A stretch of 64,000 nucleotides of DNA. Origin: Macrostomum lignano (lineage: Eukaryota). The position numbers and the translations under genes were made by a program. The notes under the pieces were generated by a model that was not told the DNA's origin, did no database searches, and worked only from the letters and a program-made list of their open reading frames with translations. The stretch spans positions 1,116,001-1,180,000 of the forward strand of contig NIVC01000029.1 of assembly GCA_002269645.1 (NCBI GenBank), written 5' to 3'. Below, one piece after another: positions 640 through 64,000 of this stretch (positions are counted from its first letter, which is position 1; every line of letters starts with the position of its first letter).

Positions 640-3439
640 GTTGTAACATCCTGGACATTAGGCAAACCGGGTCAAAATGCAACTAGCGGATTCTGTGCTT
701 CAAAATCGCCTAATAAAAACTGGTCTGAGATGTACATAAATGTCACCGATGTCCTTGTTGGCTTTAGATTTTTTAGTCAGCAAGACGGACAGGTGTCATT
801 GGAGAATATCAGTTTGACAGTTAACATTGTCAATGGCAGTCATTTTATTAACCCAATGACCCCTGGTCCAGTGCGTTTTATTGCCAAGACAGGTTTGCCA
901 CTGTCGAGCAATACAGAATGCTTTGTCTGCAAGTCTGAGCTGGACTTGCCAGTTAAGCCTGAAAATGAAACTTTGAGCGACATTGCAGAGCTGAAATTAA
1001 CATCTGGAACTCTGATTCAGGTAAGATTTCTTGAATATGTGGTATTTATATTTTATTTTTTGTTTCTGTTCGTACTTCTAAAATAAGGAACTCTTTAAAA
1101 TTCCAATTCAAGGCATTTAATGTCACCAATGGCACATTTAGCAGCAAAGTGGCCAGATGCCCTGAAGACTCCAATGGTACTATTCCTACTTCTGTGGCAC
1201 CGTTCACTACCAGGTTTGTTTTGTTGCTTAACAATGCTTTGTAGTCACTGATTAGCTACCTCAGGGGGTATTTAACTGCTGACTAACATTGTGTAGTAGT
1301 CACTGATTAGCTACCTCAGGGGGTATTTAACTGCTGAATAACATTGTGTAGTAGTCACTGATTAGCTACCTCAGGGGGTATTTAACTGCTGAATAACATT
1401 GTGTAGTAGTCACTGATTAGCTACCTCAGGGGGTATTTAACTGCTGACTAACATTGTGTAGTAGTCACTGATTAGCTACCTTAGCTACCTATTTTACTGC
1501 TAAGCAAACATTTTACTCTGATAAGTTAATTCAAAGGGTGTTTAAATTTCATTTTATTCATTAATATCTGTCTGTATTTTAAAAAATCTTAAGCACAAAT
1601 CGCCAAATATGTACAAATGTTTATACAAATGTTTATACAGAAATGTCAATATGTTGGGCCTAATACTTTTGCAAAATGTTAAAGTTAAAACAAACGGACT
1701 AAAAAGTGAAAATTCTAGCAGTTTTGATGCGTCATTCTTGAACGCAGAGTTTAGATTTGCAACTGAAAATCTGTTGAAAGTGTTGAAATGAAAGCAAAGC
1801 TTAACGATGTACAGTAACTGTAGAAGATAGTTATCGAATTCACTTGGTGCTTCCAAGTGCTGCGTATGCCAAAGCGCCCGAGCTTACTTGTAGGATATGA
1901 GTTTTAAGGATGTGAAAATTTAATTTGCAGCGAAAAATTTATTCACTTTTATTTTGTTTGTTTAGAATGACCATTAACTGATGGTGTTAGTTATTAAATA
2001 ATAGCCGTGTTTGATTAGATTTGTCTTTAGTGTAGTAAGGTAAAAAAAACTTTTTCCTCAATAAGCTTGGAAAATAAGAAAATCCCTTTGAATCATCCAT
2101 CTCCCCCCCCCCCAAATTAGAGAATCCCCTTGAATCATCCATCTCCCCAAATTAGAGAATCCCCTTGAATCATCATCCATCTCCCCAAATTAGAGAATCC
2201 CCTTGAATCATCCATCTCCCCAAATTAGAGAATCCCATTGAATCATCATCCATCTCCCCAAATTAGAGAATCCTCTTGAATCATCCATCTCCCCAAATTA
2301 GAGAATCCCATTGAATCATCATCCATCTCCCCAAATTAGAGAATCCCCTTGAATCATCATCCATCTCCCCAACTTAGAGAATCCCCTTGAATCATCCATC
2401 TCCCCAAATTAGAGAATCCTCTTGAATCATCCATCTCCCCAAATTAGAGAATCCCCTTTGAGTCATCCATCTCCCCAAATTAGAGAACCCCCTTTGAGTC
2501 ATCCATCTCCACAAATTAGAAACCCCCTTTGAGTCATATATCTCCACAAATTAGAAACCCCCTTTAAGTCATCCATCTTCACAAATTAGAAATCCCCTTT
2601 GAGTCATATATCTCCCCAAATTAGAAATCCCCTTTGAGTCATATATCTCCCCAAATTAGAAATCTGATTGATTATGGAAACGTGAAGTCAAGTTTTCTAA
2701 AGGCATCAATTCGCCCCGTACACACAGCGCTCCGCCGTCACAGCCGCCTCTGCTAACGCTGACCGTGAACAGCGCTCTCACAGATCTACCTTGCATTCGT
2801 CTGCAGTCCAGACTGCAATTGCAAATACCCTACCTGCGACCTGGCATGGTTGCTATGGCAACAGTTTTCATACGCAAAGACGCCACAGTTACCGGAGATT
2901 GCGGCGACGACGTGAACAAAACTGCTCCGATAGAGCAGACAATGATGGTGAATTTTTTTAATGACTGGATTCTGACTTTCTTTTTCAAAAGGACGGCCAG
3001 CGATTACGGGCTAAGTGGACTCAGCTTAGTCTACAATGTTAATGATGCCGCTGTGTTCCCAGGTGCCACGGATGTTGGAAAAATTTTCCAAACCAATGTC
3101 AGTAGCGATTTAGTGCCTAGCAAAGTGCCTAGCAACGGTTACTATGATTGTCAGGTGGTGAATTTAACTCTGCCAGGACCAACAGTTCCTTACAGTTCGG
3201 ATAAAACGGTTATCGCTCTAACTGGCAAAGAGTTTATTGTGCAAGCCTTTCGTGACACTTCCAAGAATAGCACAGGATTTTTTACTGGCACTAAGAAGGA
3301 CTGCCTGTCGGATCAGGTGAACAATATTGTGCCTATCGTGGTTGGAGCGTCTCTGGCCGCTCTGGTAGTCATTGTGCTTGTCGCTTATTTGATTGGAAGA
3401 AGAAGGGCAGCTGCTCGAGACGGCTACCAGAGCGTGTGA
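640..3439 (+). CDS. LAMP: Lysosome-associated membrane glycoprotein (LAMP family), 5'-partial; exons 640-1020, 1113-1213, ~2728-3439
   Basis: Two luminal LAMP-like domains (..IQ/AFNVTNGTF..C.ED and CIRLQSRLQLQIPY..VQAF..C..D), a Pro/Thr hinge, many N-x-S/T sequons, a TM helix (IVPIVVGASLAALVVIVLVAYLI) and a C-terminal RRR..GYQSV lysosomal GYxxPhi motif. Splice phases are consistent; the last acceptor is approximate. The signal-peptide exon lies outside the window. Confidence 0.9.
1241..1490. repeat. 55-bp tandem repeat (~4.5 copies) in LAMP intron
   Basis: Unit gtagtcactgattagctacctcagggggtatttaactgctga(c/a)taacattgtgta, with starts at 55-bp spacing (1261, 1316, 1371). Confidence 0.95.
2089..2665. 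repeat. ~30-35-bp minisatellite in LAMP intron
   Basis: Repeated gaatcatccatctccccaaattagagaatcccctt with drift. Confidence 0.95.
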
Positions 3440-9839: not shown

Positions 9840-10495
9840 AGTGTCTTTTCCTTCTACCCCTTGTGTGTCCTTTGCAGTTTCCTCTGCTTACCCCTTGTTT
9901 GTCCTTCGGTATGTCTCCTTCTACCCATTGTGTGTCCTTTGCAGTTTCCTCTGCTTACCCCTTGTTTGTCCTTCGGTATCGTCTCCTTCTACCCCTTGTG
10001 TGTCCTTTGCAGTGTCCTCTGCTTACCCCTTGTGTGTCATTCGGTGTCATCTCCTTCTACCCCTTGTGTGTCCTTTGCAGTGTCCTCTGCTTACCCCTTG
10101 TGTGTCCTTCGGTGTCTTCTTCTTCTACCCCTTGTGTGTCCTTTGCAGTGTCCTCTGCTTACCCCTTGTGTGTCCTTCGGTGTCCTCTCCTTCTACCCCT
10201 TGTGTGTCCTTTGCAGTGTCCTCTGCTTACACCTTGTGTGTCCTTCAGTGTCCTCTCCTTCTACCCCTTGTGTGTCCTTTGCAGTGTCCTCTGCTTACCC
10301 CTTGTGTGTCCTTCGGTGTCCTCTCCTTCTGTCCCCATTCTTTAGTATCCTCTCCTTACCTGGTGTGCCCTTCAGTGTCCTCTCCTCACCCTCTGTGTCC
10401 TTCAGTGTCCTCTTCTTACCCCTTGTGCATCCTTAAGTGTCCTCTGCTTACCCCACATGTGTGTCCCTCGGTGTCCTCTCCTTACCCTCTGCGTT
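9840..10495. repeat. ~67-bp dimeric minisatellite (two ~33-bp subunits)
   Basis: Alternating tcctctgcttaccccttgtgtgtccttcggtg and tcctctccttctaccccttgtgtgtcctttgcagtg. Confidence 0.93.
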
Positions 10496-11164
10496 CTTTA
10501 GCGTCTTAGTCACACCCGCAGAGCTGAAGCCTCGCCTCTAAAGAACACGTGTGCTACTCTTCAGAAGACGAACGCTTATAAAACTCTACTATGTGAATAC
10601 GTGCACATGTACTTTTTATTCAGACAGCCACATCCATGAGCAACCTGGCTCTGATGGGCGACGTCCAAAGGCTCAGATAACTGGCCAACAGGCAGAACGC
10701 TAACTGGCGCGACCGGTGGGGCCAGACCCCGCTGCTGCGGGCTGCCTGGGCTGGCGAGTTCGTGCCCAACCAGGGCCACGCCGACTGCGCCAGCCTGCTG
10801 CTCAAGCTCGGCGCCGACGCCAACGTCAAAGACCCCGACAGAGTGTCGGCGTTGCACTGGTCGGCCGAGTCCGACAACCTGCCGGTGCTGAAGCTGCTGG
10901 CTGACGCCGGGGCCCGGCTGGACGCCACCGACAAGCGCGGACTGACGCCGCTGATGTTGGCGAGCTGGCGGGGACACCTGCGGTCGGCCAGGGAGCTGCT
11001 GCGGCTCGGCTGCGACCCCAGCGTCGAGAACAAGTACGGTGACACGGCGGCATCGCTGGCTGAGATGTACGAGCACGGCGATGTTGTCCGACTGCTGGCT
11101 GACTGGTGAGCAGGCTGCATATGGAGATGAGGGAGGGAGACCGGAGGTGACATGGGTGGAGGAG

Positions 11165-11535
11165 AAGAGAGGGGAGACAAGAGAGGGGAGACAAGAGAGG
11201 GGAGACAAGAGAGGGGAGACAAGAGAGGGGAGACAAGAGAGGGGAGACAAGAGAGGGGAGACAAGAGAGGGGAGACAAGAGAGGGGAGACAAGAGAGGGG
11301 AGACAAGAGAGGGGAGACAAGAGAGGGGAGACAAGAGAGGGGAGACAAGAGAGGGGAGACAAGAGAGGGGAGACAAGAGAGGGGAGACAAGAGAGGGGAG
11401 ACAAGAGAGGGGAGACAAGAGAGGGGAGACAAGAGAGGGGAGACAAGAGAGGGGAGACAAGAGAGGGGAGACAAGAGAGGGGAGACAAGAGAGGGGAGAC
11501 AAGAGAGGGGAGACAAGAGAGCGGAGACAAGAGAG
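11165..11535. repeat. 14-bp purine-rich tandem repeat (gagaggggagacaa)n
   Basis: About 25 near-perfect copies just after the ANK exon donor. Confidence 0.97.
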
Positions 11536-11760
11536 CGCAGGGTGTACAGTGCACTGGCCCTGATCTGCAGGCATGGGTTTGCGGATCAATTGTAGTCGTC
11601 TAATTTTCTAATCATCAGGCATGTACACTCTCTGTGCTTTGGGCACTGGACCTCATGGCTGTGAATTCCACGACAACCCCCTGACCAATTTCCATGCACA
11701 CGAGCCCCAAATAAATTTGGCCGCGCAGGGAATCGAACCAGGGTTCGCATGGCGCAAAAA
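11530..11760 (-). mobile_element. tRNA-headed SINE-like element (copy A of a dispersed family)
   Basis: The minus strand has an exact Pol III B-box GGTTCGATTCC (11729-11739) in a tRNA 3'-half-like context. It is followed by the GAGTGTACATGCCTGATGATTAGAAA..CTGTACACCCTG core shared with other copies in the window. Confidence 0.6.
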
Positions 11761-12319
11761 CGATCCCCAAAACTTAGGGATGTTTTATAGACAAAAGGCT
11801 TTAACTCAAGAACAATAATCTTTCAGACAATAGTCTCTGAACTCGAAAATCTTCAGGTCAAAGAACTCCCACGGAGCCTCCGCAAAATTCAAAGCGCCAG
11901 TACAGATGGATGGCGATGACGAGTGAGTCCGCTTCTAGAGATGTCTGAGCAAATCTAGCTGATTCGAAACTCATTTAGATCGCTCGACACTCAGTGTTCA
12001 GAAAAATTGATTTAAATGTACTTTTACAGCGTTCACTTTCTGGAGCAGATGAAGATGGACGTGTTCCTGCCGCAGCAGTCTGATCAAGCAAGATCACTGA
12101 ATCCTATTGGGTATGATTATAGATGATGGTTCTGTTTGTGAAGGTAAAATATTTATTTCATAAGCATTTCAATTTAATCATTCTCGTCTATTTTTGTTCT
12201 TTGCAGATTTGGGCGTCTTTCTCCATCGCCAGTGCACAGTCACTCAGATTTTGGGTAAGTTTTCCTGAGATTTATCTCTTTAAGATTTCAACAGCCAACC
12301 CACATATCTAGGTGCCCAC

Positions 12320-12515
12320 TCAACCCTGAGATACTGCTCTCAACCCTGAGATACTGCTCTCAACCCTGAGACACTCTAAAAACTGAGACACTGCTCTTAA
12401 CACTAAGACACTGCTCTTAACACTAAGACACTGCTCTTAACACTAAGACACTGCTCTTAACACTAAGACACTGCTCTTAACACTGAGACACTGCTCTTAA
12501 CACTAAGACACTGCC
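12320..12515. repeat. ~22-bp tandem repeat (cactaagacactgctcttaa-like)
   Basis: About 9 copies ending at the acceptor of the caspase exon at 12528. Confidence 0.93.
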
Positions 12516-12842
12516 CTCCACCGACAGAGGTCATTCAAGCAACGTGTACCCAGTAACAGAGCCTCAAGGCCACTGCGTTGTGGTCAATATCGAGAACTAC
12601 GATCCGGAGTCCAACTTCAGTCGTCGCGAAGGCTCAAACCTGGACGTGCGTCGAGTTAAAACTTTGTTTAAATCGCTCGGCTTCAAGGTGTGGATAATAA
12701 AGGATGTGACAGGTACATAATTTTACTTGTGTCATTCTTTATTGATTCAATTAAGTAAAACATATGCTCGTATCAAGGGGACAAATTGGCTCGGTAGTAA
12801 CGTCCTTAAGACTGTTCGTCCAGTTTGTTCGTTCAAACTTGT

Positions 12843-12920
12843 GCCGCTTGTGCACCTTGAGTGAGCCTGTGCTTGCTTACCTCGTACTTATCCGCGTGCT
12901 TGTGCATATTCAGGCATAAA
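12843..12920 (+). mobile_element. Diverged fragment of the SINE-like family in the copy-1-specific caspase intron
   Basis: gcttgtgcaccttgagtgagcctgtgc..cgtacttatccgcgtgcttgtgcatattcagg aligns by eye to 16388-16461 (gctgtacaccctgtgtgagcgtgtgc..cgtactgtattggcgcgcttgcatgtgctcagg). Confidence 0.6.
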
Positions 12921-13982
12921 CGGAATGGGCATGACCCCTTGTCCTCGTTAGCTGTGACACGTGAAACGATATCAAATCTAATTGACAATGCTTCCGCTTA
13001 GTAGCATTTAAAAAATTCCGGTTTCTTAGAATGCGTTGAAACCATTCGCAGGCCAGGAGATCTTCTGGGAGTTGAGCAACTATGCTCGAGGCGACCACAG
13101 CCAATTTGGCACATTCGTCTGCTTCCTGATGGCCCACGGCACAAAGGGTGCGATCTACGGAAGCGACGGGCAGTACCAGTCGCTCAAGGAGCTGTTGTCC
13201 CTGTTCCAGCCGAGCAAGTGTCGGGGTCTGGAGCGCAAGCCGAAGATCTTCTTCACACAGGCTTGTCGAGGAGCCGACGGCGAGCACCTCGCCGAGCCCG
13301 CACCGGAGGTTCAGCACGATGGCAACGTACCAGTGAGGAATTCTCTCTACAGCCCGAACGAGAGCGACTTCCTCATCTGCTACGCCAACACGGAAGACTC
13401 GCCAGCTTACCGGGATCCCAACAACGGGTCAATATTTATTCAGACTCTATGCGACGTTATCGAAGAGCAATACGAAACTGAATTCCTCGAGGACATGATA
13501 CTGGAAGTGAACAATCGGGTCACTAATCGACCAATTCAAGGCGGAGATGGCAGCTTCTATCAGGCGGTGGTGGAAAAAACCGGTTGTTTATCAAAGAAGG
13601 TGTCGTTCAATCCGCACATGGCTTCGTGAAACAATTTTGATAGCCTCTCTAGCAAGGGACTAAACAGCTCATTTTAGAAAATTCGACCCGTCAAATGAGA
13701 CCCGTTTCACTTTAAAAAATCGCGAATTTTTTTGTCTGATGGTAATAAAACCTTACTTAATAGAGCGTAACAAGCTAAACTTTGCTAAATCCCTTTTGAC
13801 ATTTGGGTTTTTCCGGTCTTTAACTATGCTTTATGACAATTATTTGCACCGGTTTAGATTGTATTTTTACATTTATTGTCCATCGACTTCAACATGTATA
13901 TGATTTTCTGTCGGCGGTGGTTTGATAGCTCAATCGATTCAGCGGTGTTAAAGAGCTTAATTAACTGTTTTGTCTTGTACAC

Positions 13983-14627
13983 CAATGTGCGAGAGAAATG
14001 ATCGATTTTCCAGTCTACCCTTTCTAACCCAATTTTACTGACTGTTGCGCACACTAATGTGCGAGAAGAAGATGATCGATTTTCCTGTCTACCCTTTCTA
14101 ACCATACTTTATTGACTGTTGCGCACACCAATGTGCGAGAGCAATTATTGATTTTCCTGTCTACCCTTTCTAACCCTACTTTATTGACTGTTGCGCACAC
14201 CAATGCGCGAGAAGAATTATCGATTTTCCTGTCCACCCTTTCTAACCCTATTTGATTGACTGTTGCGCACACCAATGCGCGAGAAGAATTATCGATTTTC
14301 CAGTCTACCCTTTCTAACCCAATTTTACTGACTGTTGCGCACACTAATGTGCGAGAAGAAGATGATCGATTTTCCTGTCTACCCTTTCTAACCATACTTT
14401 ATTGACTGTTGCGCACACCAATGTGCGAGAGCAATTATTGATTTTCCTGTCTACCCTTTCTAACCATACTTTATTGACTGTTGCGCACACCAATGTGCGA
14501 GAGCAATTATTGATTTTCCTGTCTACCCTTTCTAACCCTACTTTATTGACTGTTGCGCACACCAATGCGCGAGAAGAATTATCGATTTTCCTGTCCACCC
14601 TTTCTAACCCTATTTGATTGACTGTTG
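13983..14627. repeat. ~72-75-bp minisatellite with a 290-bp higher-order duplication
   Basis: Unit actgttgcgcacaccaatgtgcgagag..ctaccctttctaacc; identical variant blocks start at 14054 and 14344. Confidence 0.93.
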
Positions 14628-15139
14628 TGTTTTTCATTATTTTACGCGAGGAATTATCGGTTTATCGACTCTATACCGCCCCTCCCAAACACCCACCCCT
14701 CCATTTCCCTAACTACTAGCCCAGTGTGACTGATTTTGACTACATGGACATCCTAACGAAACATCCTTCTCCTTCGCCCTTCTCTGTTATAGCTTGCATT
14801 ATTTGCACCTAAGTCATCAACATAATTTGAATGCAAAATCAGCCCTTTTAGTTGCTGTCTTGCCAAGCACTTAATACCTGTTGTCATTTGCGAAACTTTT
14901 GAAGTTATTTGTCCTCACTTAGAATTAAGCCTTTTTACCGTCTTTCTGTACTTCTTTCTCTGTAGCAATCAAACAGTTTTTTGTCTCGCCCTGTTGAGCT
15001 GCTTTTGATTTTCATTTTGTTATATTAAGACTCTGCTTCATTTCAGATTTGGTCCTCAGAATCAGACAATAAATTAAGCTTGATTACTCCATTTTTATTA
15101 AATCATTGATTTTTCTAGCTAACAGCTTTTCAGACGAAC

Positions 15140-15752
15140 TGGCGTTCTTCAAGTGAAATGGCGCCTTTCCAAGGGAAATGGCGCCTCTCTAAATTAAACA
15201 GTGCCCGTTTGAAGAAAATTGCGTCTCTTCCAATGAAATGGCCCCTGTCTAAATAAAATAACGCTTTATCAAAAGAAACAGCGCCTCTTCAAATGAAATG
15301 GCGCCTCTTCAAATGAAACGGCGCCTCTTCAAATGAAATGGCGCCTTTTTGAAAAAACTGGTACCTCTTTAAATGAAATGGCGCCTCCTAAAATGAAATG
15401 GCGCCTCTTCAAATGAAATAGCGGTTCTTCAAATTAAATGGCGTTTCCTTCAAATGAAATGGCGCTATTTTAAATGAAATGGCGCTTTTTTAAATGAAAT
15501 GGCGCTTTCTTCAAATGAAATGGCGCTTCTTCAAATGAAATGGCGCTTCTTAAAATGAAATGGCGCTTTTTCAAATGAAATGGCGCTTTTTTAAATGAAA
15601 TGGCGCTTTTTTGAATGAAATGGCGCTTTTTTAAATGAAATGGCGCTTCCTTCAAATGAAATGGCGCTTCTTCAAATGAAATGGCGCTTCTTCAAATGAA
15701 ATGGCGCCTCTCTAAATGAAATGGAGCCTCTTCAAATGAAATGGCGCCTCTT
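15140..15752. repeat. ~19-bp minisatellite (ttcaaatgaaatggcgcctc-like)
   Basis: About 30 degenerate copies upstream of ANK-caspase copy 2. Confidence 0.93.
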
Positions 15753-16172
15753 TAAGTGATCTTGAATGTACCGGATATCCGCTTTGCTGTCTGTCGGGTG
15801 GTCAGTTTTTTCACGGTAGCTTGTAGAAATTAAATGGCGGACGTTAGCGCGACTTAATGACAAAATTCATGAATTCCTTGAGCTGTTTTACGGGGCCCTA
15901 CGAGCTCTGCGATGCACAATGGCACAGCCAAGAGATACACTTTCTATCTCTATCTCTACCTTGGAGCATTTCAAAGGCATAATTGTAAGCTGGCCAGTGT
16001 ACGCGTGGGCCTGTGGTTTCAGCTTGACAGAGTTTTGAAGAGCCATGCTTTCTTCTGTTACACTGGCTGCTTGAATACGAGAATTATTTAAATAGATGAA
16101 TTCTAAAAAACTCAGTAAAGTTTTTTTATCTGACTAACGCTCAAGAATAGGTAAGTTTTATCTGGTCAAGAC

Positions 16173-19100
16173 ATGGACTCAATGACGGTGAGTTTCAGAT
16201 TGTAAATCAGTTGTATTTGATTTGAACTTTATCGACTGAAGCTTAAAATTACTATACTAACGTCTACCATCTACCTATCTGTAATCTTTTTGATTACTCA
16301 TCTACTCAAATGCCTACTTGAATATATCTGGCTGCCAATAGCGTACAGTGAGTGTACATGACTGACGATTAGAAAGTCATCAGGGCAGCTGTACACCCTG
16401 TGTGAGCGTGTGCATGAGTGCATGCCTGCGTACTGTATTGGCGCGCTTGCATGTGCTCAGGAGTCGGCAGAATGGGCAGCATTGCCGTCAGCTCTGATTG
16501 TAGGACGATCTCATAAACAATAAACCATCTACCTCACTACCAATTTACGACGTTACCCAGCCACCAGACCAGCAAACATTTAACAAAGCTAATTACACGC
16601 AAACTATATTATTGTTAAAATCTAAACAGCCCGCTGACAGGCTCAGCAACCTGGCTCTCATGGGCGACATTCGTCGACTACAACTGCTGGCCAACAGAGG
16701 CAATGTGAACAGGCGCGACCGGTGGGGCCAGACCCCGCTGCTGCGGGCTGCCTGGGGCGGCGAATCCGGACCGAACCCCGGTCACAAGGACTGCGCCAGC
16801 CTGCTGCTCAAGCTCGGCGCCGACGCCAACGTCAAAGACCCCGACGGAGTGTCGGCGTTGCACTGGTCGGCCGAGTCCGACAACCTGCCGGTGCTGAAGC
16901 TGCTGGCTGACGCCGGGGCCCGGCTGGACGCCACTGACAAGCGCGGACTGACGCCGCTGATGTTGGCGAGCTGGCGGGGACACCTGCGGTCGGCCAGGGA
17001 GCTGCTGCGGCTCGGCTGCGATCCCGGCGTCGAGGATAAGGACGGCGACACGGCGGCGTCGCTGGCTGAGATGTACGAGCACGGCGATGTTGTGCGACTG
17101 CTGGCTGACTGGTGAGCTCGAGAGGGAGTTCAGAGAGGGCTAACAGACATAGGGGAGAGGTGAGGGAGATACATGTATGGTAAATAGGGAGACAAGAGAG
17201 GGGAGACAAGAGAGGGAGACATGAGATGGGGGGCAAGAGAGGGGAGATATGAGAGGGAGACATGAGATGGGAGATAAGAGAGGGAGATAAGAGAGGGAGA
17301 CAAGAGAGGGGAGATAAGAGAGGGAGATAAGAGAGGGAGACATGAGATGGGAGATAAGAGAGGGAGATAAGAGATGGGAGATAAGAGAGGGAGATAAGAG
17401 AGGGAGACAAGAGAGGGGAGATAAGAGAGGGAGATAAGAGAGGGAGACATGAGATGGGAGATAAGAGAGGGAGATAAGAGAGGGAGACATGAGATGGGAG
17501 ATAAGAGAGGGAGACATGAGATGGGAGATAAGAGAGGGAGATAAGAGAGGGAGACAAGAGAGGGGAGATAAGAGAGGGAGATAAGAGAGGGAGACATGAG
17601 ATGGGAGATAAGAGAGGGAGATAAGAGAGGGAGACAAGAGAGGGGAGATAAGAGAGGGAGACAGGAGAGCGGAGACAAGAAACTTCAACTTTAATCTCCA
17701 TTGAAACGCAGGAATTCTCAACAGACAGGAAGAGACTGGTACAGTGAGGACCAGTAAGTTTTAAAATTTAAATCAAAATGCTACTTTAATGCTACTAAAC
17801 GATCAAAAGGTTTTACCTGTTTGCGCAACTTTTTGCCCTCGTATAACAATAGCGTCGATACTGACGATGACCTAGTAGAAGAAGAAGACCACAGTGAGAG
17901 CAATCGATCCAGAGCCAGCAGTGCCAAAAGAAACTTCGTGAGACAAAAATCAGCGGCACCTGTGGGGTGAGCAGTTGACCTCAATAATTTTTAATGTATA
18001 AAAACGTTCTATTGTTTATTTCTCAGCTATCCTTTGTCCATTTTTTTAAATCTATAGAACTTTGAAGCGACCCGAAATGTACCGGTCGTCAACCAGTTTT
18101 ATGAATCGGTCACTTCCAGTGTAAGTGCAACAGTTTGCTTGTAAAGTGATTCTGGTTTTTATTATTGACTCACCTGAAGCCAGTTTGACTCACCTGAACC
18201 CAGTTTGACTCACCTGAAGCCAGTTTGACTCACCTGAACCCAGTTTGACTCACCTGAAGCCAGTTTGACTCACCTGAACCCAGTTTGACTCACCTGAAGC
18301 GAGTTTGACTCACCTGAAGCCAGTTTGACTCACTTGAACCCAGTTTGACTCACCTGAATCCAGTTTGACTCATCTGAACCCAGTTTTACTCACCTGAACC
18401 CAGTCTGACTCACCTGAACCCAGTTTGACTCACCTGAACCCAGTTTGACTCACCTGAACCCAGTCTGACTCACCTGAAGCCAGTTTGACTCACCTGAACC
18501 CAGTTTGACTCACCTGAAGCCAGTTTGACCCACCTGAACCTAGACTGACTCACCTGAACTTTCAGTGGCAGATCTTTCCGCCACTACCCGGTCAAAGATC
18601 CGCAAGGTCACTGCCTGATAATCAGCATCGAGCACTACGATCCGGGATCGCATTTCACCAACCGCACCGGTTCGGAACTCGATGTGGAGCGAGTCGAATC
18701 GCTCTTCGCTTCGTTGCACTTCAAAGTGACGGTGAAACGCGACTTGACTGCTCCGCAAATTTTCCATGAGATGTCGCGCATCGCCAAGTTTGATCATTCG
18801 GACTACGGGACCTTTATCTGCTTCCTGATGGCTCACGGCACGAAGGGCGCCATCTACGGTCGAGATGGTCAGTTCCATCAGATCAAGGATCTGATCTCAC
18901 TGTTCAAGCCAAACATCTGCAAAGGCTTGGACGGCAAGCCGAAGTTGTTCTTCATACAAGCCTGTCGCGGTAACGTCGAGCAGGTTGCTCAGCCAACGAT
19001 GGAGTCGCGACGACTGCAACCTGCCAAAAAGGCGACCGAGTTTGAGACGGACGGCGAGGTGCCGGTCAAGAACGCAAACTTTGTGCCCAACGAAAGCGAC

Positions 19101-19364
19101 TTTCTGATCTGCTTTGCCAACACGGAAGATTCGCCGGCTTACAGGCACCCAGACGAAGGCTCGGTGTTCATTCAGACTCTGTGCGACGTCATTGGCGATC
19201 AGTACGAAACCGAGGATCTGGAGGGCATGGTGCTGGACGTAAATCGCATTATTTGCGGGAAGAAAATTCCCGGACAGAGAAGGAACGTGTTCTATCATTC
19301 GGTGGTTGACAAGCAAGGAAGACTTACTAAACGAGTGTCACTCAATCCGAATGATGCCAAATAG
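16173..19364 (+). CDS. Ankyrin-repeat caspase copy 2, intact, 466 aa; exons 16173-16187, 16630-17111, 17712-17753, 18058-18120, 18566-19364
   Basis: MDSMT|PADRLSNLALMGD.. about 4 ANK repeats..LADW|NSQQ..|..|GRSFRHYPVKDPQGHCLIISIEHY..NRTGSELD..FLMAHG..QACRG..FETDG..AYRHPDEGSVFIQ..*. Exon lengths sum to 1401 nt (467 codons) with no internal stop. The His/Cys dyad and both S1 Arg residues are present. Confidence 0.88.
16345..16475 (+). mobile_element. SINE-like family copy B (core and 3' part) in intron 1 of ANK-caspase 2
   Basis: gagtgtacatgactgacgattagaaagtcatcagggcagctgtacaccctgtgtgagcg..gcatgtgctcaggag matches the reverse complements of 43540-43660 and 57790-57870. Confidence 0.7.
17186..17675. 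repeat. GA-rich minisatellite after the ANK exon of copy 2
   Basis: Mixed gagagggagataa / gagaggggagacaa / gagatgggagataa units, related to the array at 11165-11535. Confidence 0.95.
18167..18560. repeat. 20-bp tandem repeat (gactcacctgaa(c/g)ccagttt)
   Basis: About 19 copies running into the acceptor at 18565. Confidence 0.96.
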
Positions 19365-19741
19365 AGAACTCAATGATCACAGGTGCTGGTTGGACGTAAA
19401 AGAAGTTCCCCTGAAGATTAGAAGCAAACAAAAGTACTGCGCACTTTCTAAATATCGGATTGATCCGTTTTTCATAGAGTACGTAGCATCAAAAGGAGGT
19501 TTTTACCATAGACTTTTAACCACATTATTTATTGTTTATTTATTCACTCATGTATTTATTGTTTTAAATAATTATGGAGTTTTGCTATATACTAATTAAA
19601 TCGAGAAAAAACTTAAAAGAGACAGGAACAACAGAAATTTTGCAAGAAATTTGCCTGCTGCAATTTCCGGTACCATTGCGTGAAGAAAATAGTTGTTAAA
19701 CTTCGACCAAGCACATTTGGTTCATTCGGAACTCGGAAGCA

Positions 19742-20227
19742 AGGACCACTGTAGTATAACAAACAGCACGTAAAACTCAGAGATCGTGTATTTTTAGAGG
19801 CCAATTTCCCGGGGGGAAATCACTTGCGGGGATAAGAAAAAAATCGTTTAAAAGACAACTAGAGTATCGCCTGTCTTTTAAACGAAAATATTTTGTGAAT
19901 GTTTTTTCTTCACAAAATCAATAATCGTATTCGATCTGGGACGGTGAAGATTACCATTTCTTTAATTTAGCATGCAAAGCATGTTACTCTATTATATTTT
20001 ATATTTTTATGTAGTGAAAGAAGCAAAAATAGAAATTTCACTTATGAGTATTTAGAACTTTGGCTTGGGCTTATATGAAAGGGCTTTACAAAATATTGCT
20101 AAATTTAAATATGCATGCTTTGAAAAATTTTTTTTTTTCATCTCCGCAGTGCTTTTCTTCTAGGAAACTGGCGTCTAAAAAATATACGATCTATGAATTT
20201 CACGTTCTGTTATACTACAGTGGTCCT
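19742..20227. mobile_element. Fold-back/MITE-like inverted repeat with ~60-bp arms
   Basis: 19742-19803 (aggaccactgtagtataac..agatcgtgtatttttagaggcca) is the imperfect reverse complement of 20169-20227 (tggcgtctaaaaaatatacgatct..gttatactacagtggtcct). Confidence 0.6.
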
Positions 20228-24250: not shown

Positions 24251-24290
24251 AATTTCTTCTTGTTGCAAAGAATCGCCGACCGAGTCAACC

Positions 24291-27200
24291 ATGCGAAGCG
24301 TCTCCTCGCTGGCCGCCGCAACTCGGACGCAGGCCCGCTGTCGGACTAGAAACGCAGCCGCTGCTGCCGCCGCCGCCGCTGCCGCTGCCGCAGCCGCCAC
24401 TTCAACAGCCGACTCGGCAGCTCCAACTAAAGAGAGTTCGCTGGACAAAATTCTCTTCGAGACGGCTAAAGAATCTGCTGAAGCTGCAATTGAAGAGGAG
24501 AAAGCCGAGCAGAATGCCGACAACAGAGAGGAAGAGCAGTCGAGTCAGGTGGCTGCGTCTTCGGTGCTGGATCTCAGCCGCTCCGGCGCTGACGTCGACG
24601 AAGCAACGCGTCAGAGAAAACGACGCTGCTCAGATCGAGACGACGATAAAAATGAGACTGAGGAGGCCGAAGGCGCGAATGTTACGGTGAGTTTCGTCTG
24701 ACCCGATTTGAGCACCAGTGACACCCTGACCCGATTTGAGCATCCCGTGACACCCTGACCCGATTTGACCACTCCGAGACAGCCTGACCCGATTTGAGCA
24801 CTCCGTGACACCCTGACCCGTGGGAGAACCCCCGTTACACCCTGACCCGATTTGAGCACTCCGTGACACCCTGACCCGATTTGACCACTTCGTGACACCC
24901 TGACCCGATTTGACCACTCCGAGACACCCTGACCCGATTTGACCACTCCGAGACACCCTGACCCGATTTGACCACCCCGTGACATCCTGACCCGATTTGG
25001 CACAATTAGGAGCGTTTTAATGCCTTTTGAATTTTACGTACAGTGGGTAATTTCTTCGTGGCTCTTCGTAATCTTCCCAACGCAATTTTCGTCTCAATTT
25101 CCAGTCGTCAAACGGCGCAGCCGAGAGCAAGAACTCCCAGCCAGCAGTTAAGGAAGAAGATCCCGAAGAGGGAGAAGAAGAAGAGGAGGAAGAAGAAGAG
25201 GAGGACGATGTCGAGGAGGAGCCGCGCGGTAGCGTTGAAAGCGCTTCGGTCTTGGACGACGAGCGAGTGAAAGCGTTCAATGTGAGTCCAACAGATGCTT
25301 GCGATTACAGACACCTGTGACTTGACTAAGTTCACAGAACACTTTTCAAGTTACAGAACACCATCCCAAGTCACAGAACACCATCCAAGTCACAGGGCAC
25401 CATCCAAGTCACAGAACACCATCCAAGTCACAGAACACCATTCAAGTCACAGAACACCATCCAAGTCACAGAACACCATCCAATTCACGGAACACCATCC
25501 AAGTCACAGAATATCATCCAAGTCACAGAACACCATCCAAGTCACAGAACACCATCCAAGTCGCAGAACACCATCCAATTCACGGAACATCATCCAAGTC
25601 ACAGAATATCATCCAAGTCACAGAACACCATCCAAGTCACAGAACACCATCCAAGTCGCAGAACACCATCCAATTCACGGAACACCATCCAAGTCACAGA
25701 ATATCATCCAAGTCACAGAACACCATCCAAGTCACAGAACACCATCCAATTCACGGAACACCATCCAAGTCACAGAACACCATCCAAGTCACAGAACACC
25801 ATTCAAGTCACAGAACACCATCCAAGTCACAGAACACCATCCAATTCACGGAACACCATCCAAGTCACAGAATATCATCCAAGTCACAGAACACCATCCA
25901 AGTCACAGAACACCATCCAAGTCGCAGAACACCATCCAATTCACGGAACACCATCCAAGTCACAGAATATCATCCAAATCACAGAACACCATCCAAGTCA
26001 CAGAACACCATCCAAGTTACAGAACAACATCCAATTCACGGAACACCATCCAAGTCTCAATATCATCCAAGTGTTCCTATTTTTACTCTCACACTGCAGC
26101 TATTCGTCAGATTTTTCGTCGACGAGAACATGGACCGAATGGTCCCAATTTCCAAGCAGCCCAAGGACAAGCTCAACGGCATACTGGACGCGTGTGAGAG
26201 ACAATTCCCCGAGCTGTTCGATCGGGCCAGGAAACGGGTTCGCACCTACTTAAAAGCGTGCCGACGAAACGGCAGGAAACACGGCGGACTTCCGGCAGAG
26301 AGCACAGTCAAGCCGGTAGGAATTATGCTAGTTATTTTGCTGGCAGGGGCGAGTAACAGGATCAGATAGACTACCCTTGGCGCACCTAGGATCAGATAGC
26401 CTACCCTTGGCACACGCTTTCCCAAACAAAATGGGGTCCGCAGAGCGACACCTGCCGTCTGATCGAGGGTGGAGAAAATTGCGCCAATTTACGTTGCTTT
26501 TTCGGCTTTTTTCAGCGAGCAATTTTCGGCTTTATATTTTTTTCATTTGGAAGCAAATTTTTGCCTAAAAGGAGGTGCTGATCATTGGCCACATCTGCAG
26601 CTGCGAAAATGCTTTATTTTCTTATGTAAAGGAAAACAGGAAATGCCTGAACCCCTGTGAGGTCCGCTAATCTCAGCTGAGCCTCTCTAGAGGGGCCGCT
26701 TGCCGAATCCTAGATGGGGGGTGTCGCCTTGCTCAAAAGCCTTCTTTCCCAGCCTCCTGACGCTCGCCACCTTATATAGGGAGTGATTGAGCAATGATTC
26801 GGGCTTATAAAATCACCTGCTCATTATGTTGAAAGTATGGAACTGTATTAGAAGAAATTACATCTGTGAGAGGGTGTTTCGGGAGTTAGGGTTCTGTGAG
26901 ATGTTGCTTTTCTTTGGATGGTGGATGGTTATCACTAGGTACAGGTAGCTTTGAGATTGGATAGTGGATGGTTATCACTAGGTACAGGTAGCTTTGAGAT
27001 TGGATAGTGGATGGTTATCACTCAGGTACAGGTAGCTTTGAGATTGGATAGTGGATGGTTATCACTCAGGTACAGGTAGCTTTGAGATTGGATAGTGGAT
27101 GGTTATCACTAGGTACAGGTAGCTTTGAGATTGGATAGTGGATGGTTATCACTCAGGTACAGGTAGCTTTGAGATTGGATAGTGGATGGTTATCACTAGG

Positions 27201-40070: not shown

Positions 40071-42245
40071 CCAGCCCCGAAGACCGCAGCAGCAACGATG
40101 CGGAATTCGATGACGAAGACATCTCTGAGGACGGCGAAGAGGAGTTCAAAGTTGCCGGGAAGACTTCCGCTTCGTCTTCGACTGTTGCCGGTGTTGCTAC
40201 GGCTGTTTCTGCTGCTGCTGCCGGAAGCAAGCGCAGGAGACGGCGCATCCTGTTCACCAAGCAGCAGTGCCAGCAGCTGGAAGCCCGGTTTCGCCAGCAG
40301 AGGTATCTGTCTGCTGCTGAGCGGGAGCAGCTGGCCCTGCGCATCGATCTGACGCCTACGCAGGTAAGTGTTGCTATGGGAATTTCATGAGATTCTTTTC
40401 CGTTGCTATGGTGTTGCTATGGGAATTTCATGAGATTCTTTTCCGTTGCTATGGTGTTGCTATGGGAGTTCTAACAGGCATTAATCCGTTACTATGGTGT
40501 TTCTATGGGAAGTCTAAAAGTTTCTTATCCGTTGCTATGGTGGTACTATGTAAATTCCATGATGTTTAACAGGTTTATATTGCTATGGTATTTCTATGGG
40601 CATTCTACCAGATTTATTGATATTTGGAAAGCTCTATTTCGAAACGATATTTTAAATATAACTTTTTGGATCACGTTGAGAGAGATTTCATTGATTAAAA
40701 TTTTAGCCTCACTTTGAGCTGTTAAATTTTCTAGAAAATTATCCTGCCAAAAGTAATTGCTCAGACACTGGGTGTTAATTATTCTGTATAATAAAATAGT
40801 TTATCAAGTGATTTATTCAGAACATTTTTGCCTGGTAAACTTTGGTTATCAAGCGCGGCGGGAGATTTCAAATTTTATTGCATTGGGTGACCGACTGCTG
40901 ACACCAGCAGCTGGGGGGGGGGGGCACAGCAGGTGGGTTAACAAATTGACCAATTAGCGATGCTGCTCTGTGGGAAGCCGCGGTCTGCGAAGCAAAAAAG
41001 CAAATTAGCAGCAAAATAGACATTTTTGGCGATAATTCATTTTTTCTTTAAGCGAGAGTTTTGAATCGCACTTTGTTGGAGAAATTTATGAATTAGTGTA
41101 ATTTATGAATAATATGCGTTAGTCACTTTTTGATAATCTGATGTGATGAAAGGTGATGATTGAATTGCTAACCGAGGAAATGAATAAGTAATTACGGGGC
41201 CATTGGTGAACTAACGGGGTCATTGGTGAACGGTTAGGATCACTGGTGAACGAATGGGGTCATTGGTGAACGGTTAAGATCACTGGTGAACGAATGGGGT
41301 CATTGGTGAATGGTTAGGATCACTGGTGAACGAATGGGGTCATTGGTGAACGGTTAGGATCACTGGTGAACGAATGGGGTCATTGGTGAACGGTTAGGAT
41401 CACTGGTGAACGAATGGAATCATTGGTGAACGGTTGAGGCCACTAGTAACCGAATGGGGTCATTGGTGAACGGTTAAGGCCACTGGTGAACGAATGTGGT
41501 CATCGGTGAACGATTAAGGCCACTGGTGAACGAATGGGGTCATTGGTGAACGGTTAAGGTCATTGGTGAACGATTTGGTCCTTTGGTGAATGATGGGTTG
41601 ATTTGTGAATGATAGGGCCATTGGTGAACGATTCGGTCCATTGGTGAATGATGAGGTAATTAGTGAACACGATGGATAAATGGTGAATACGACAGGTCAA
41701 TGATGAAAGCTACAGTTGTGACTCTGATCGATGGGTCAATGGTGAAAGCTACAGTTGTGACTGTGATCAATGGGTCAATGGTGCATTCCAGTCAAATACA
41801 ATATCAAACTCTTAATGATTTCAACTTTTTAATCTTCCCCCTCCCCAAACCCCAGGTGAAGATCTGGTTTCAGAACCATCGCTACAAGTGCAAACGAGCC
41901 GAGGTACAAGGTGACAGCGGTTGCGACTTCCCGTCGGAGGATGCGACAGCGGCAACGCCAACCAGACGGACGTCGCGCAAGCGTCGTCGCAATGAAGACG
42001 TCGTCGCCTCTACGTCCGACTTTGCATCCGCGAATTCCAAGCGGCATCAGCTGCATCCGGCATTTCTTCCGGCCGCGCTGCAGCATCAGCCAACTGTGTC
42101 AGCGTTTCGCACTTTCCCACATCTGCAGCTGCATCACCAGCAGCAGCAGCCCCAGCTGCCTCATCATCAGAATCACTTAGCTGCGATGGCAGCCATGGCG
42201 GCGGCAGGATTCTGGCCGTGGAATTCCGCCTCATCTGCCATTTGA
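40071..42245 (+). CDS. NK2-class homeobox transcription factor (NK2.1/NK2.2-like); exons 40071-40363 and 41856-42245, 5' end uncertain
   Basis: The spliced homeodomain [43 protein letters not shown]|[14 protein letters not shown] has the NK2-diagnostic Tyr54 (HRYK). The intron falls between codons 46 and 47. Confidence 0.9.
40368..40545. repeat. Degenerate ~43-bp repeat with several GTTGCTATGG motifs
   Basis: Starts right after the homeobox intron donor. Confidence 0.8.
41196..41700. repeat. 20/40-bp minisatellite (cattggtgaacggttaggatcactggtgaacgaatggggt)
   Basis: In the homeobox intron. Confidence 0.92.
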
Positions 42246-61369: not shown

Positions 61370-62101
61370 TCCTATCAGCATGCAAAACACAAAGCAACCG
61401 CGTTCAGACATTTGAAAGCCGCTGTTTTATAACACTGATTTGAATTAGATAGATTTTTCTTCACATTCATTTTCTAAGCTCAAATTTGTTATAATTTTGG
61501 TACAATCTATTTTAACACAACGATATATAACTAGTTATCGTTCAAAAATTATTGAAGAGGTTGACAAGGTAAAGGAAATTCGTGTATTTCCTACTAATTT
61601 ATTTTAATGATTAATAGAGTAAATATGTAATGTATTTAAATATAGCAAATTTATTACACATAAATGTCATGTCTAGTGACAAGCGGAAGCTTAAAATGGG
61701 AAAGACAAGTACAAAATCTACACAATCTAGTCGGTAAGACACTTCAAATCAATGACGCCGGATTCTTGTCTGCGTCCTAAAAAAAGAACAGTTAGGTTAT
61801 CCAGACATTGAAAAGGTTAGTATAATATATTTTGCTAAAGCCCACGATCTGAAAAAAACGAAATAAACGTCAGATAGAAGCAATTAGAACATCAAGCATG
61901 CCGAAAATGTTGTGTAAGCTATGGTTCTTTTATGCAACTAAATAAGTTAAAACGATTTTTTTATTAACTGACGAGCATTAGTCGAAATGTAAAAGCTGAA
62001 TTTTATTTAAAAAAGCGGTCTTATAGATAACAACAAGCACTGAGGCTAAAACACTGAAGTCAGTTTTAATTTCATCTTGCAATCAAGAAGCCACAAAGTC
62101 C

Positions 62102-63725: not shown

Positions 63726-64000
63726 GCTCTGCAAAGATGGCGAATGATTGATAAAAACTATATCTAACAGATATGAATCCATCACACATGTTCACACAGA
63801 AGAGTTTTCAGTAGCATAAATATATTTTCTGCTACGTACTAGTAGTAGTTAAAACGCTAATAGCCATAGATATACTTTTTATATATTAGGTATGATGATG
63901 AAGAATTTAAAACAAAGTATGTGAGTTGAGTTCAGAAAAAAACTGGGCTACAATTTGTTCTGTAAGATGGCTTTGCACTGAACCACAACAACGACTACAT

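What the first reader, a model, noticed from the sequence alone, without database searches (positions are those of the whole stretch)
10624..19364. Tandem pair of caspases with an ankyrin-repeat prodomain (ANK-caspases)
Seen in sequence: two genes each splice about 4 ankyrin repeats in frame to a full caspase p20/p10. Both keep the catalytic His (MAHG) and Cys (QACRG), the S1 arginines, and linker Asp sites (FETD/G in copy 2, resembling IETD/VETD, and VQHD/G in copy 1). Established: animal initiator caspases normally use CARD, DED or death-fold prodomains. Inference: the ANK array may be a direct sensor or adaptor that recruits or dimerises the protease without a death-fold platform, which would be a lineage-specific cell-death or immune module. 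I cannot confirm that this architecture is unreported.
Basis: partly seen in the sequence, partly recalled or inferred. Interest (0 to 1): 0.8.

Follow-up and report, generated by a model that had tools for sequence, protein, structure and literature searches.

The report
Tandem ankyrin-caspase genes in Macrostomum
Two neighbouring genes of the free-living flatworm Macrostomum lignano join an ankyrin-repeat domain to a caspase-8-like protease; this design was already described in flatworms in 2024, one of the two copies carries an early stop codon, and the only mildly new point is that the design is not limited to parasitic flatworms.

Summary
Two tandem genes on the + strand (10624-13629 and 16630-19364) each have one GC-rich exon encoding about 4.5 ankyrin repeats. 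Through phase-2 GT-AG introns this exon can be spliced in frame to a complete caspase domain with all catalytic and Asp-pocket residues.

Three corrections:
- Copy 1 has an in-frame TAA at 10678-10680, in the first ankyrin helix, so it cannot make the full fusion protein.
- The "read-through TGA" at 17113-17115 is only the splice donor (TG|GTGAGC).
- The architecture is not unreported. "ANK caspases" of flatworms were described by Horkan et al. 2024 (PMC11463336), who credit Lee et al. 2014 for Schistosoma.

The window is Macrostomum lignano, by a 98% identical UniRef protein that already joins Ank and Peptidase_C14. This species has at least six further ANK-bearing caspase groups. One of them, Mlig019067, clusters with the parasite ANK caspases (83% bootstrap). 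The window genes sit in a Macrostomum-only expansion (72%).

The published statement that ANK caspases are restricted to parasitic flatworms is therefore too narrow. Function is inferred only: a caspase-8-like initiator recruited through its ankyrin array.

Verdict: new member of a known kind; interest about 0.3.

The parts
10624..11105 (+). Copy 1 ANK exon. Acceptor is ttattcag|ACAGCC, first ATG at 10636, donor is GACTG|gtgagc in phase 2. About 4.5 ankyrin repeats, 68% GC.
   Evidence: Pfam Ank_2 3e-28. GC3 0.76-0.94.
10678..10680 (+). In-frame TAA in copy 1. It replaces a conserved Leu (CTG in copy 2) of the first ankyrin helix and lies downstream of every candidate start codon.
11165..11535 (.). 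14-bp GA-rich minisatellite (26.5 copies) in the intron after the copy 1 ANK exon. It is related to the array in the same position of copy 2.
11857..11922 (+). Copy 1 linker exon (66 nt, phase 2-2). Predicted only.
   Evidence: GT-AG and frame. No independent support.
12030..12110 (+). Copy 1 linker exon (81 nt, phase 2-2). Predicted only.
12207..12254 (+). Copy 1 linker exon (48 nt, phase 2-2). Predicted only.
12528..12712 (+). Copy 1 first caspase exon: start of p20, including the S1 Arg in RREGSNLD.
13052..13629 (+). Copy 1 second caspase exon: MAHG, QACRG, VQHD/G linker, p10, and stop TGA at 13627-13629.
16173..16187 (+). Speculative 5' coding exon of copy 2 (ATGGACTCAATGACG|gtgagt). The alternative is SL trans-splicing at 16630, with the ATG supplied by the spliced leader.
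   Evidence: sequence only; the SL ends in ATG. Database models start exactly at PAD(K/R).
16630..17111 (+). Copy 2 ANK exon. Acceptor is aaacag|CCCGCT, donor is GACTG|gtgagc in phase 2. 68.5% GC. The 'TGA' at 17113-17115 lies inside the donor.
   Evidence: P0001 is 98% identical across it.
17186..17680 (.). GA-rich minisatellite in the intron after the copy 2 ANK exon.
17712..17753 (+). Copy 2 linker exon (42 nt, phase 2-2). Predicted; it is skipped in the homologous database model P0001.
17853..17966 (+). Copy 2 linker exon (114 nt), encoding the acidic VDTDDDLVEEED stretch.
   Evidence: Present in P0001.
18058..18120 (+). Copy 2 linker exon (63 nt).
   Evidence: Present in P0001.
18165..18559 (.). 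20-bp minisatellite (about 20 copies) in the last intron of copy 2.
18566..19364 (+). Copy 2 caspase exon, holding the whole p20-linker-p10: R272, H329 (MAHG), C372 (QACRG), D401 (FETD/G), R432, and stop TAG at 19362-19364. P0001 uses an acceptor 6 nt downstream.
10783..11015 (+). Gene-conversion tract: only 2 differences in 233 nt against 16789-17021 of copy 2, in genes whose caspase exons are saturated at synonymous sites.

Best explanation
The region holds two old tandem paralogues of a Macrostomum lignano caspase family. In this family the prodomain is an ankyrin-repeat array instead of a CARD or DED.

Copy 2 (504 aa in my model) is intact. It has about 4.5 ankyrin repeats, an acidic and basic linker of about 75 residues, and a caspase-8-like p20/p10 domain. 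That domain carries the His-Cys dyad, the Arg-Gln-Arg-Ser Asp-binding pocket and an FETD|G processing site in the inter-subunit linker.

Most likely mechanism (inferred, not shown): the ankyrin array binds a partner protein or scaffold. This concentrates the zymogen, drives dimerisation and self-cleavage after Asp401, and the active protease then cleaves effector caspases or other substrates after Asp.

Copy 1 keeps an intact, constrained caspase domain but has a nonsense codon in the first ankyrin helix. It is therefore either a young pseudogene or makes only a product that lacks most of the ankyrin array.

The ANK exons of the two copies have been homogenised by gene conversion.
For: Shown:
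- Domain content.
- Clean GT-AG, phase-2 gene model for copy 2.
- An independent fused gene model at 98% identity (P0001).
- Best solved relatives are caspase-8 by sequence (124.7 bits) and by fold (4ps1_D, TM 0.82/0.92, rmsd 1.5; model pLDDT 89.9).
- Catalytic and S1 residues and the linker Asp lie in conserved columns.
- Caspase domains have dN 0.34 against saturated dS of about 2.6, so there has been long purifying selection on both copies.
- ANK mid-exon dS is 0.03, and similarity runs into the intron minisatellite.
- At least six other M. lignano caspase groups carry Ank domains in single gene models. Neodermatan ANK caspases exist.
- The window copies group together at 95%, inside a Macrostomum clade at 72%.

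From the literature: ANK caspases are proposed to be initiators and are sister to DED caspases (PMC11463336).
Against: - No transcript, protein or activity data were available. The junctions rest on sequence logic and on a gene model of a homologous locus.
- If the intron after the ANK exon is retained, the ORF ends at once (…LLADW-TGA). This would give an ANK-only protein.
- An in-frame Met in exon 18058-18120 could start a caspase-only protein.
- The copy 1 stop could be an assembly error or a polymorphism.
- The deep position of the Macrostomum clade relative to ANK/DED caspases is unresolved (bootstrap under 15%).
- The ANK array is no closer to other ANK-caspase arrays than to generic ankyrin proteins.
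Confidence: 0.7

Rival explanations
1. The ANK exon and the caspase exons are separate transcription units, for example two genes of an SL trans-spliced operon, or an ANK-only transcript ending in the first intron. Under this reading the fusion is an annotation artefact.
For: - The ANK ORF ends in TGA exactly at the donor if the intron is unspliced.
- There is an AATAAA at 11710 in the copy 1 intron.
- About 30% of M. lignano genes are SL trans-spliced and about 15% lie in operons (PMC8629364).
- Some family members in databases lack ANK (P0292, P0136), although these may be partial models.
Against: - All introns from the ANK exon to the caspase exon are phase 2 and all linker exons are multiples of 3 in both old paralogues.
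- The SL-donated ATG would be out of frame at each internal acceptor (by reading the sequence).
- There is no AATAAA or ATTAAA in the copy 2 intron 17112-17711.
- The fused model P0001 and at least six other M. lignano ANK+caspase single gene models exist.
- The same architecture occurs in Schistosoma, Trichobilharzia and Taenia.
Confidence: 0.12
2. The fusion is real, but the ankyrin array acts mainly as an in-cis or in-trans inhibitor or substrate selector of the protease, docking on the caspase as designed ankyrin-repeat proteins do, rather than as a recruitment and dimerisation module.
For: - Designed ankyrin-repeat proteins bind and inhibit caspases specifically (cited in PMC11463336).
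- The long flexible linker with Asp-rich stretches (VDTDDD) could allow release by cleavage.
Against:
- Long prodomains of caspase-8/9-like enzymes generally recruit rather than inhibit (established knowledge).
- ANK arrays differ widely among paralogues, which fits varied external partners better than one conserved intramolecular site.
Confidence: 0.12
3. Both copies are decaying, unexpressed relics of a large, repeat-ridden polyploid genome. The apparent intactness of copy 2 is incidental.
For: - Copy 1 has a nonsense codon.
- Neither copy has an exact match among annotated proteins; the best match is 98%.
- The introns are filled with minisatellites, and 33% of the window is tandem repeat.
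Against: - Copy 2 has a 504-codon ORF with no defect and all functional residues.
- The caspase domains have dN/dS of roughly 0.13 despite saturated dS.
- A near-identical homologue is in a gene set.
Confidence: 0.06

Closest known systems
Platyhelminth 'ANK caspases' (Horkan et al. 2024, Genome Biol Evol evae204, PMC11463336; first noted in Schistosoma by Lee et al. 2014). Examples: S. mansoni 'subfamily C14A unassigned peptidase' P0399/P0403, and Taenia solium P0411.
   Same: - N-terminal ankyrin repeats followed by a full p20/p10 caspase domain.
- Caspase-8-like catalytic domain.
- Flatworm lineage.
- No death-fold domain.
- Function unknown; proposed to be an initiator.
   Different: - The window genes fall in a Macrostomum-only clade (72%), not in the neodermatan clade. 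That clade instead takes in M. lignano Mlig019067 (83%).
- The window proteins are shorter (504 aa against 700-825 aa).
- The motif is MAHG rather than SHG.
- The ANK arrays show no specific similarity.
- The host is free-living, whereas the paper calls ANK caspases restricted to parasites.
Caspase-8 / DED caspases
   Same: - Best sequence match and best structural match.
- Initiator-like long prodomain.
- ETD-type Asp in the inter-subunit linker, at the conserved processing position.
   Different: - No DED (Pfam), so FADD/DISC-type recruitment is not expected.
- QACRG rather than QACQG.
Other M. lignano caspases with non-death-fold prodomains: Mlig018903 (ANK + protein kinase + caspase, the 'kinase-like prodomain' caspase of Horkan et al.), Mlig030125 (kinase + ANK + caspase), Mlig000293 (Ras/Roc + caspase), A0A1I8GH60 (LRAT + caspase).
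   Same: - Same Macrostomum caspase clade.
- Same MAHG-type catalytic domain.
- An N-terminal module swapped onto a conserved protease.
   Different: The window genes have only the short ANK array and are the only members seen here as a tandem pair with a gene-converted ANK exon.
ANK-caspases outside flatworms: Alitta virens (reported in PMC11463336) and the jellyfish Sanderia malayensis P0131 (found here).
   Same: The same domain order, Ank then Peptidase_C14.
   Different: They are not grouped with the flatworm genes in the tree, so they are probably independent fusions.

Membership tests
Caspases (peptidase family C14A) | Peptidase_C14 domain above the curated threshold | tested here: met
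   159.7 bits (copy 2) and 152.8 bits (copy 1) against a cut-off of 21.4.
Caspases (peptidase family C14A) | Catalytic His-Cys dyad in the (S/A)HG and QACxG motifs | tested here: met
   MAHG and QACRG are present in both copies. H329 and C372 fall in columns conserved in 50 and 49 of 50 sequences.
Caspases (peptidase family C14A) | S1 pocket for Asp (Arg in p20, Gln before the Cys, Arg and Ser/Thr in p10) | tested here: met
   R272, Q370, R432 and S438 are in conserved columns and align to caspase-8.
Caspases (peptidase family C14A) | Caspase alpha/beta fold | tested here: met
   The AF2 model has pLDDT 89.9. The Foldseek top hit is caspase-8 4ps1_D, TM 0.82/0.92, E 1.6e-25.
Caspases (peptidase family C14A) | Cleavage after Asp; autoprocessing at the linker Asp | not testable with these tools
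   Only the sequence site is seen: FETD|G and VQHD|G at the conserved processing column.
ANK caspases (sensu Horkan et al. 2024) | Ankyrin repeats as the prodomain on the same polypeptide as p20/p10 | tested here: inconclusive
   - The copy 2 model is in frame with canonical splice sites, and a 98% identical database model is fused.
- No transcript evidence could be examined.
- Copy 1 fails because of the TAA at 10678-10680.
ANK caspases (sensu Horkan et al. 2024) | Caspase domain belongs to the monophyletic platyhelminth ANK-caspase clade, sister to DED caspases | tested here: inconclusive
   - NJ tree with 240 columns and 200 bootstraps: the neodermatan clade plus Mlig019067 has 83% support.
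- The window genes are in a separate Macrostomum clade (72%).
- The link between the two clades is unresolved.
- The paper places a member of that Macrostomum clade (the kinase-prodomain caspase) as sister to the ANK clade.
ANK caspases (sensu Horkan et al. 2024) | Restricted to parasitic flatworms, as stated in the paper | tested here: not met
   The host is free-living M. lignano. This speaks against the stated restriction, not against the architectural kinship.
DED caspases (caspase-8/10) | Tandem death-effector domains at the N terminus | tested here: not met
   There is no DED hit in Pfam; only Ank families are found.
CARD caspases (caspase-2/9, CED-3) | CARD prodomain | tested here: not met
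   There is no CARD hit.

The most novel reading that the evidence does not exclude
Macrostomum may have turned a caspase-8-like protease into a modular, death-fold-independent sensor family. In this reading one conserved protease cassette, entered through a phase-2 intron, is combined with interchangeable N-terminal modules: ANK, ANK+kinase, Ras/Roc, LRAT. The ANK exons are exchanged between paralogues by gene conversion, which would give a lineage-specific cell-death or immune repertoire. It would also mean that the ANK-caspase fusion predates parasitism in flatworms and was lost in planarians.
Probability: 0.15. Interest if true: 0.6.

Novelty: new member of a known kind. Interest (0 to 1): 0.3.

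Why it matters
The architecture itself is published, so the window adds no new kind of system. It matters in three modest ways.

- Together with the public M. lignano proteins found here, it shows that ankyrin-prodomain caspases occur, and have multiplied, in a free-living, early-branching flatworm. This argues against the published idea that they arose with parasitism.
- M. lignano is transgenic- and RNAi-tractable. It would therefore be a practical organism in which to find what the ankyrin prodomain binds, which is unknown for the schistosome and tapeworm enzymes that have been suggested as drug targets.
- The tandem pair gives a clear example of exon-level gene conversion that keeps a prodomain exon nearly identical between paralogues whose protease domains are saturated at silent sites.

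Tried and rejected
- **Full-length copy 2 search.** It timed out against the 5.8-billion-protein set, probably because of the ankyrin words. I used the linker plus caspase instead.
- **Supplementary data.** The supplementary sequences of PMC11463336 are not held. Neodermatan ANK caspases were recovered by searching with Mlig019067.
- **Full-length structure prediction.** Only the single exons were modelled. The single-sequence ANK model is poor (pLDDT 53), so I used it only for the helix count.
- **Horizontal transfer of the GC-rich ANK exon from bacteria.** A scan of 185,579 prokaryotic genomes gave only generic 33%-identical ankyrin hits. Rejected.
- **Common origin of the ANK prodomain with other ANK caspases.** By array similarity this is inconclusive: bacterial and generic ANK proteins score as high as the paralogues, and neodermatan arrays do not hit. 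By shared intron positions with Mlig019067, the introns differ.
- **P0306 and P0308.** These Schistosoma turkestanicum and Sparganum hits at first looked like short ANK caspases, but they carry no Ank domain in those models. In the tree they sit inside the neodermatan clade and are probably N-terminally incomplete models.
- **P0122 (UniRef A0A1I8FP45).** This is a frameshifted old model of the copy 2 homologue merged with the downstream gene. It is useful only for synteny.
- **Further copies in the window.** None were found.


Full report
**What is in the sequence**

Region 10,000-20,000 was read directly and its ORFs were listed. On the + strand there are two GC-rich ORFs (10762-11109 and 16612-17115) that encode ankyrin repeats. 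Each is followed 1.4-1.5 kb downstream by ORFs that encode a caspase: 12544-12720 plus 13036-13629, and 18684-19364.

Using canonical GT-AG sites I built two gene models.
- Copy 2 exons: 16630-17111 (ANK), 17712-17753, 17853-17966, 18058-18120 and 18566-19364 (the whole caspase domain). These give an uninterrupted protein of 504 residues if a small, speculative 5' exon (16173-16187) supplies the start.
- Copy 1 exons: 10624/10636-11105 (ANK), 11857-11922, 12030-12110, 12207-12254, 12528-12712 and 13052-13629.

In both genes every intron between the ANK exon and the caspase domain is in phase 2, and every linker exon is a multiple of three. The ANK module and the protease module are therefore frame-compatible in two paralogues that are otherwise very diverged.

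Pfam confirms Peptidase_C14 (1e-46 and 2e-44) and Ank_2 (1e-25 and 3e-28). A tblastn and blastn of the locus against the window finds no third copy.

**Corrections to the observation**

- Copy 1 carries an in-frame TAA at 10678-10680. This is codon 15 from the ATG at 10636, at a position where copy 2 has Leu within the first ankyrin helix. Every possible start lies upstream of this stop: the ATG at 10636, the ATG at 10654, or an ATG donated by the spliced leader. The next in-frame ATG is at 10951, inside repeat 4. Copy 1 therefore cannot make the full ANK-caspase.
- The "read-through TGA" at 17113-17115 is simply part of the splice donor TG|GTGAGC. The same is true in copy 1.
- The repeat count of "about 4" is fair. 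Pfam sees three canonical repeats. A low-confidence single-sequence model shows four helix pairs plus one capping helix.

**The protease looks active**

The copy 2 caspase exon matches human caspase-8 best among solved structures (124.7 bits, E 3.9e-35), ahead of caspase-9 and caspase-3.

In a 50-sequence alignment, the following copy 2 residues fall in columns conserved in 44-50 sequences, and copy 1 has the same residues:
- the p20 S1 Arg (R272)
- the catalytic His (H329, MAHG)
- Gln370 and Cys372 (QACRG)
- the p10 Arg (R432)
- Ser438

The Asp of FETD|G (D401; VQHD|G in copy 1) lies in the column of the conserved inter-subunit processing Asp, which is D in 45 of 50 sequences.

An AlphaFold2 model of the exon is confident (pLDDT 89.9, pTM 0.86). 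Its best structural neighbour is caspase-8 (4ps1_D, TM 0.82/0.92, rmsd 1.5 Å).

**Organism and independent support for the fusion**

A search with the linker plus caspase part found a UniRef protein of Macrostomum lignano (P0001, 343 aa, "CASPASE_P20 domain-containing protein"). It is 98% identical and carries both Ank and Peptidase_C14 Pfam domains.

Its sequence starts at PADK…, exactly at my acceptor at 16630. It runs through the ANK exon, skips my 42-nt exon, and continues through the 114-nt and 63-nt linker exons into the caspase exon, using an acceptor 6 nt downstream of mine. It comes from another locus or assembly, since it has a few substitutions. It is therefore an independent gene model that joins the two modules, but it is not read-level evidence.

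The M. lignano spliced leader ends in ATG (PMC8629364). Trans-splicing at 16630 would give M-PADR… in frame, and this may be the real start. That is inference.

**History of the pair**

The two proteins are 61% identical overall, but very unevenly so.
- The caspase domains are about 55-59% identical, with dN 0.34 and saturated dS of about 2.6. This indicates an old duplication with purifying selection on both copies.
- The middle of the ANK exon (10783-11015 against 16789-17021) differs at 2 of 233 bases (dS 0.03).
- The 5' 144 nt of the ANK exon are 76% identical (dS 0.67).
- DNA similarity continues into the GA-rich minisatellite of the following intron (85% over 924 nt).

This mosaic is the signature of gene conversion of the ANK exon between paralogues.

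The ANK exons are also compositionally odd: 68% GC and GC3 of 0.75-0.94, against 0.57-0.69 for the caspase exons. GC-biased conversion is a plausible cause. A scan of prokaryotic genomes found no close relative, so I reject horizontal transfer.

**Comparison with what is known**

The architecture is already in the literature. Horkan et al. 2024 (PMC11463336; preprint 10.1101/2023.12.11.571055) describe "ANK caspases". These form a monophyletic platyhelminth group sister to DED caspases, first noticed in Schistosoma by Lee et al. 2014, plus one case in the annelid Alitta virens. The authors propose that these enzymes are initiators.

[quoted passage not shown] For M. lignano they report only a caspase with a kinase-like prodomain, placed as sister to the ANK clade. 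No other paper in the library links Macrostomum, caspases and ankyrin.

**The family in M. lignano**

An exhaustive HMMER search of 1.84 billion representative proteins with the copy 2 caspase exon gave 6348 hits. Eight of the 147 top hits that I aligned carry ankyrin repeats, and all but one of these are M. lignano.

Pfam architectures:

| Gene or protein | Architecture |
|---|---|
| Mlig000705/009621 | ANK-caspase |
| Mlig009377 | ANK-caspase |
| Mlig019067 | ANK-caspase |
| Mlig006436/011129 | ANK-caspase |
| A0A1I8JID0 | ANK-caspase |
| Mlig018903 | ANK + kinase + caspase (the published "kinase" caspase also has ankyrin repeats) |
| Mlig030125 | kinase + ANK + caspase |
| Mlig000293 | Ras/Roc + caspase |

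An LRAT + caspase protein also turned up. The one non-flatworm hit is a jellyfish (Sanderia malayensis) model with two ANK-caspase units.

Searching with Mlig019067 recovered the neodermatan ANK caspases: S. rodhaini, S. mansoni, Trichobilharzia and Taenia solium.

**Phylogeny**

I built a neighbour-joining tree of 48 caspase domains, with 240 columns and 200 bootstraps.
- Mlig019067 groups with the neodermatan ANK caspases (83%).
- The two window copies group together (95%).
- They lie inside a Macrostomum-only clade (72%) that contains the ANK, ANK-kinase, Ras and LRAT forms.
- Deeper nodes are unresolved.

The window genes are therefore new members of a known architectural kind, belonging to a lineage-specific expansion. 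The free-living M. lignano also has what looks like the orthologue of the parasite enzyme.

I could not show whether the ANK prodomain of the window genes descends from the same ancestral fusion. The ANK arrays are no more alike than unrelated ankyrin proteins, and intron positions differ from Mlig019067.

**Mechanism**

Shown:
- a complete, constrained caspase-8-like catalytic domain
- a processing-site Asp
- an ankyrin array and a flexible charged linker encoded in frame upstream

Inferred from general caspase biology and from the literature's proposal:
- The ankyrin array serves as the recruitment module.
- It concentrates the zymogen on a partner, causing dimerisation, cleavage at FETD|G and downstream proteolysis.

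Rivals:
- separate ANK and caspase transcripts (0.12)
- an inhibitory or substrate-selecting role of the ANK array (0.12)
- non-expressed relics (0.06)

No data here speak to an immune or sensor role.

**Verdict**

Novelty is "new member of a known kind". Interest is about 0.3. The main residual value is the evidence that ANK caspases are not parasite-specific, and that a genetically tractable flatworm carries a diversified set of them.

Noticed in passing
window 1-64000: Tandem repeats (minisatellites with 4-290 bp units, 37 separate arrays) cover 32.7% of the window. Nearly every intron and intergenic spacer around the caspase genes contains one.
   Followed up: partly
window 10624-11105 and 16630-17111: The ANK exons are much more GC-rich (68% GC, GC3 up to 0.94) than the rest of the same genes and the window (about 45%). 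GC-biased gene conversion is a possible cause. No bacterial relative was found.
   Followed up: partly
window 59466-63785 (- strand): Two tandem cytochrome P450 genes, each split into two large ORFs (Pfam p450 at 2e-66 and 3e-25 for one gene, 9e-62 and 1e-26 for the other).
   Followed up: partly
window 41700-42245 (+): An ORF holding the C-terminal part of a homeodomain ([13 protein letters not shown]; Pfam Homeodomain 9e-06). It is probably one exon of an NK-type homeobox gene.
   Followed up: no
window 2765-3439 (+): An ORF ending in a LAMP-type transmembrane segment (Pfam Lamp2_2nd 9e-12). It is a likely exon of a lysosome-associated membrane glycoprotein gene.
   Followed up: no
window 24260-26300 (+): The gene downstream of copy 2 (an acidic and basic low-complexity protein with a 19-bp coding minisatellite) is merged with the caspase in an old database model (P0122, UniRef A0A1I8FP45). 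This shows conserved gene order in another assembly, and that the model is frameshifted.
   Followed up: partly
proteins P0163 (Mlig018903), P0174 (Mlig030125), P0130 (Mlig000293), P0179 (A0A1I8GH60): M. lignano caspases of the same clade carry ANK+kinase, kinase+ANK, Ras/Roc or LRAT domains at the N terminus. The published 'kinase-like prodomain' caspase also contains ankyrin repeats.
   Followed up: partly
protein P0131 (Sanderia malayensis, EukProt): A jellyfish gene model contains two consecutive ANK-caspase units, so the Ank+Peptidase_C14 architecture also occurs in a cnidarian.
   Followed up: no
protein P0138 (Mlig019067, PAA94436.1); locus L001: This M. lignano ANK caspase clusters with the Schistosoma and Taenia ANK caspases (83% NJ bootstrap). 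This contradicts the published statement that the clade is restricted to parasitic flatworms.
   Followed up: partly
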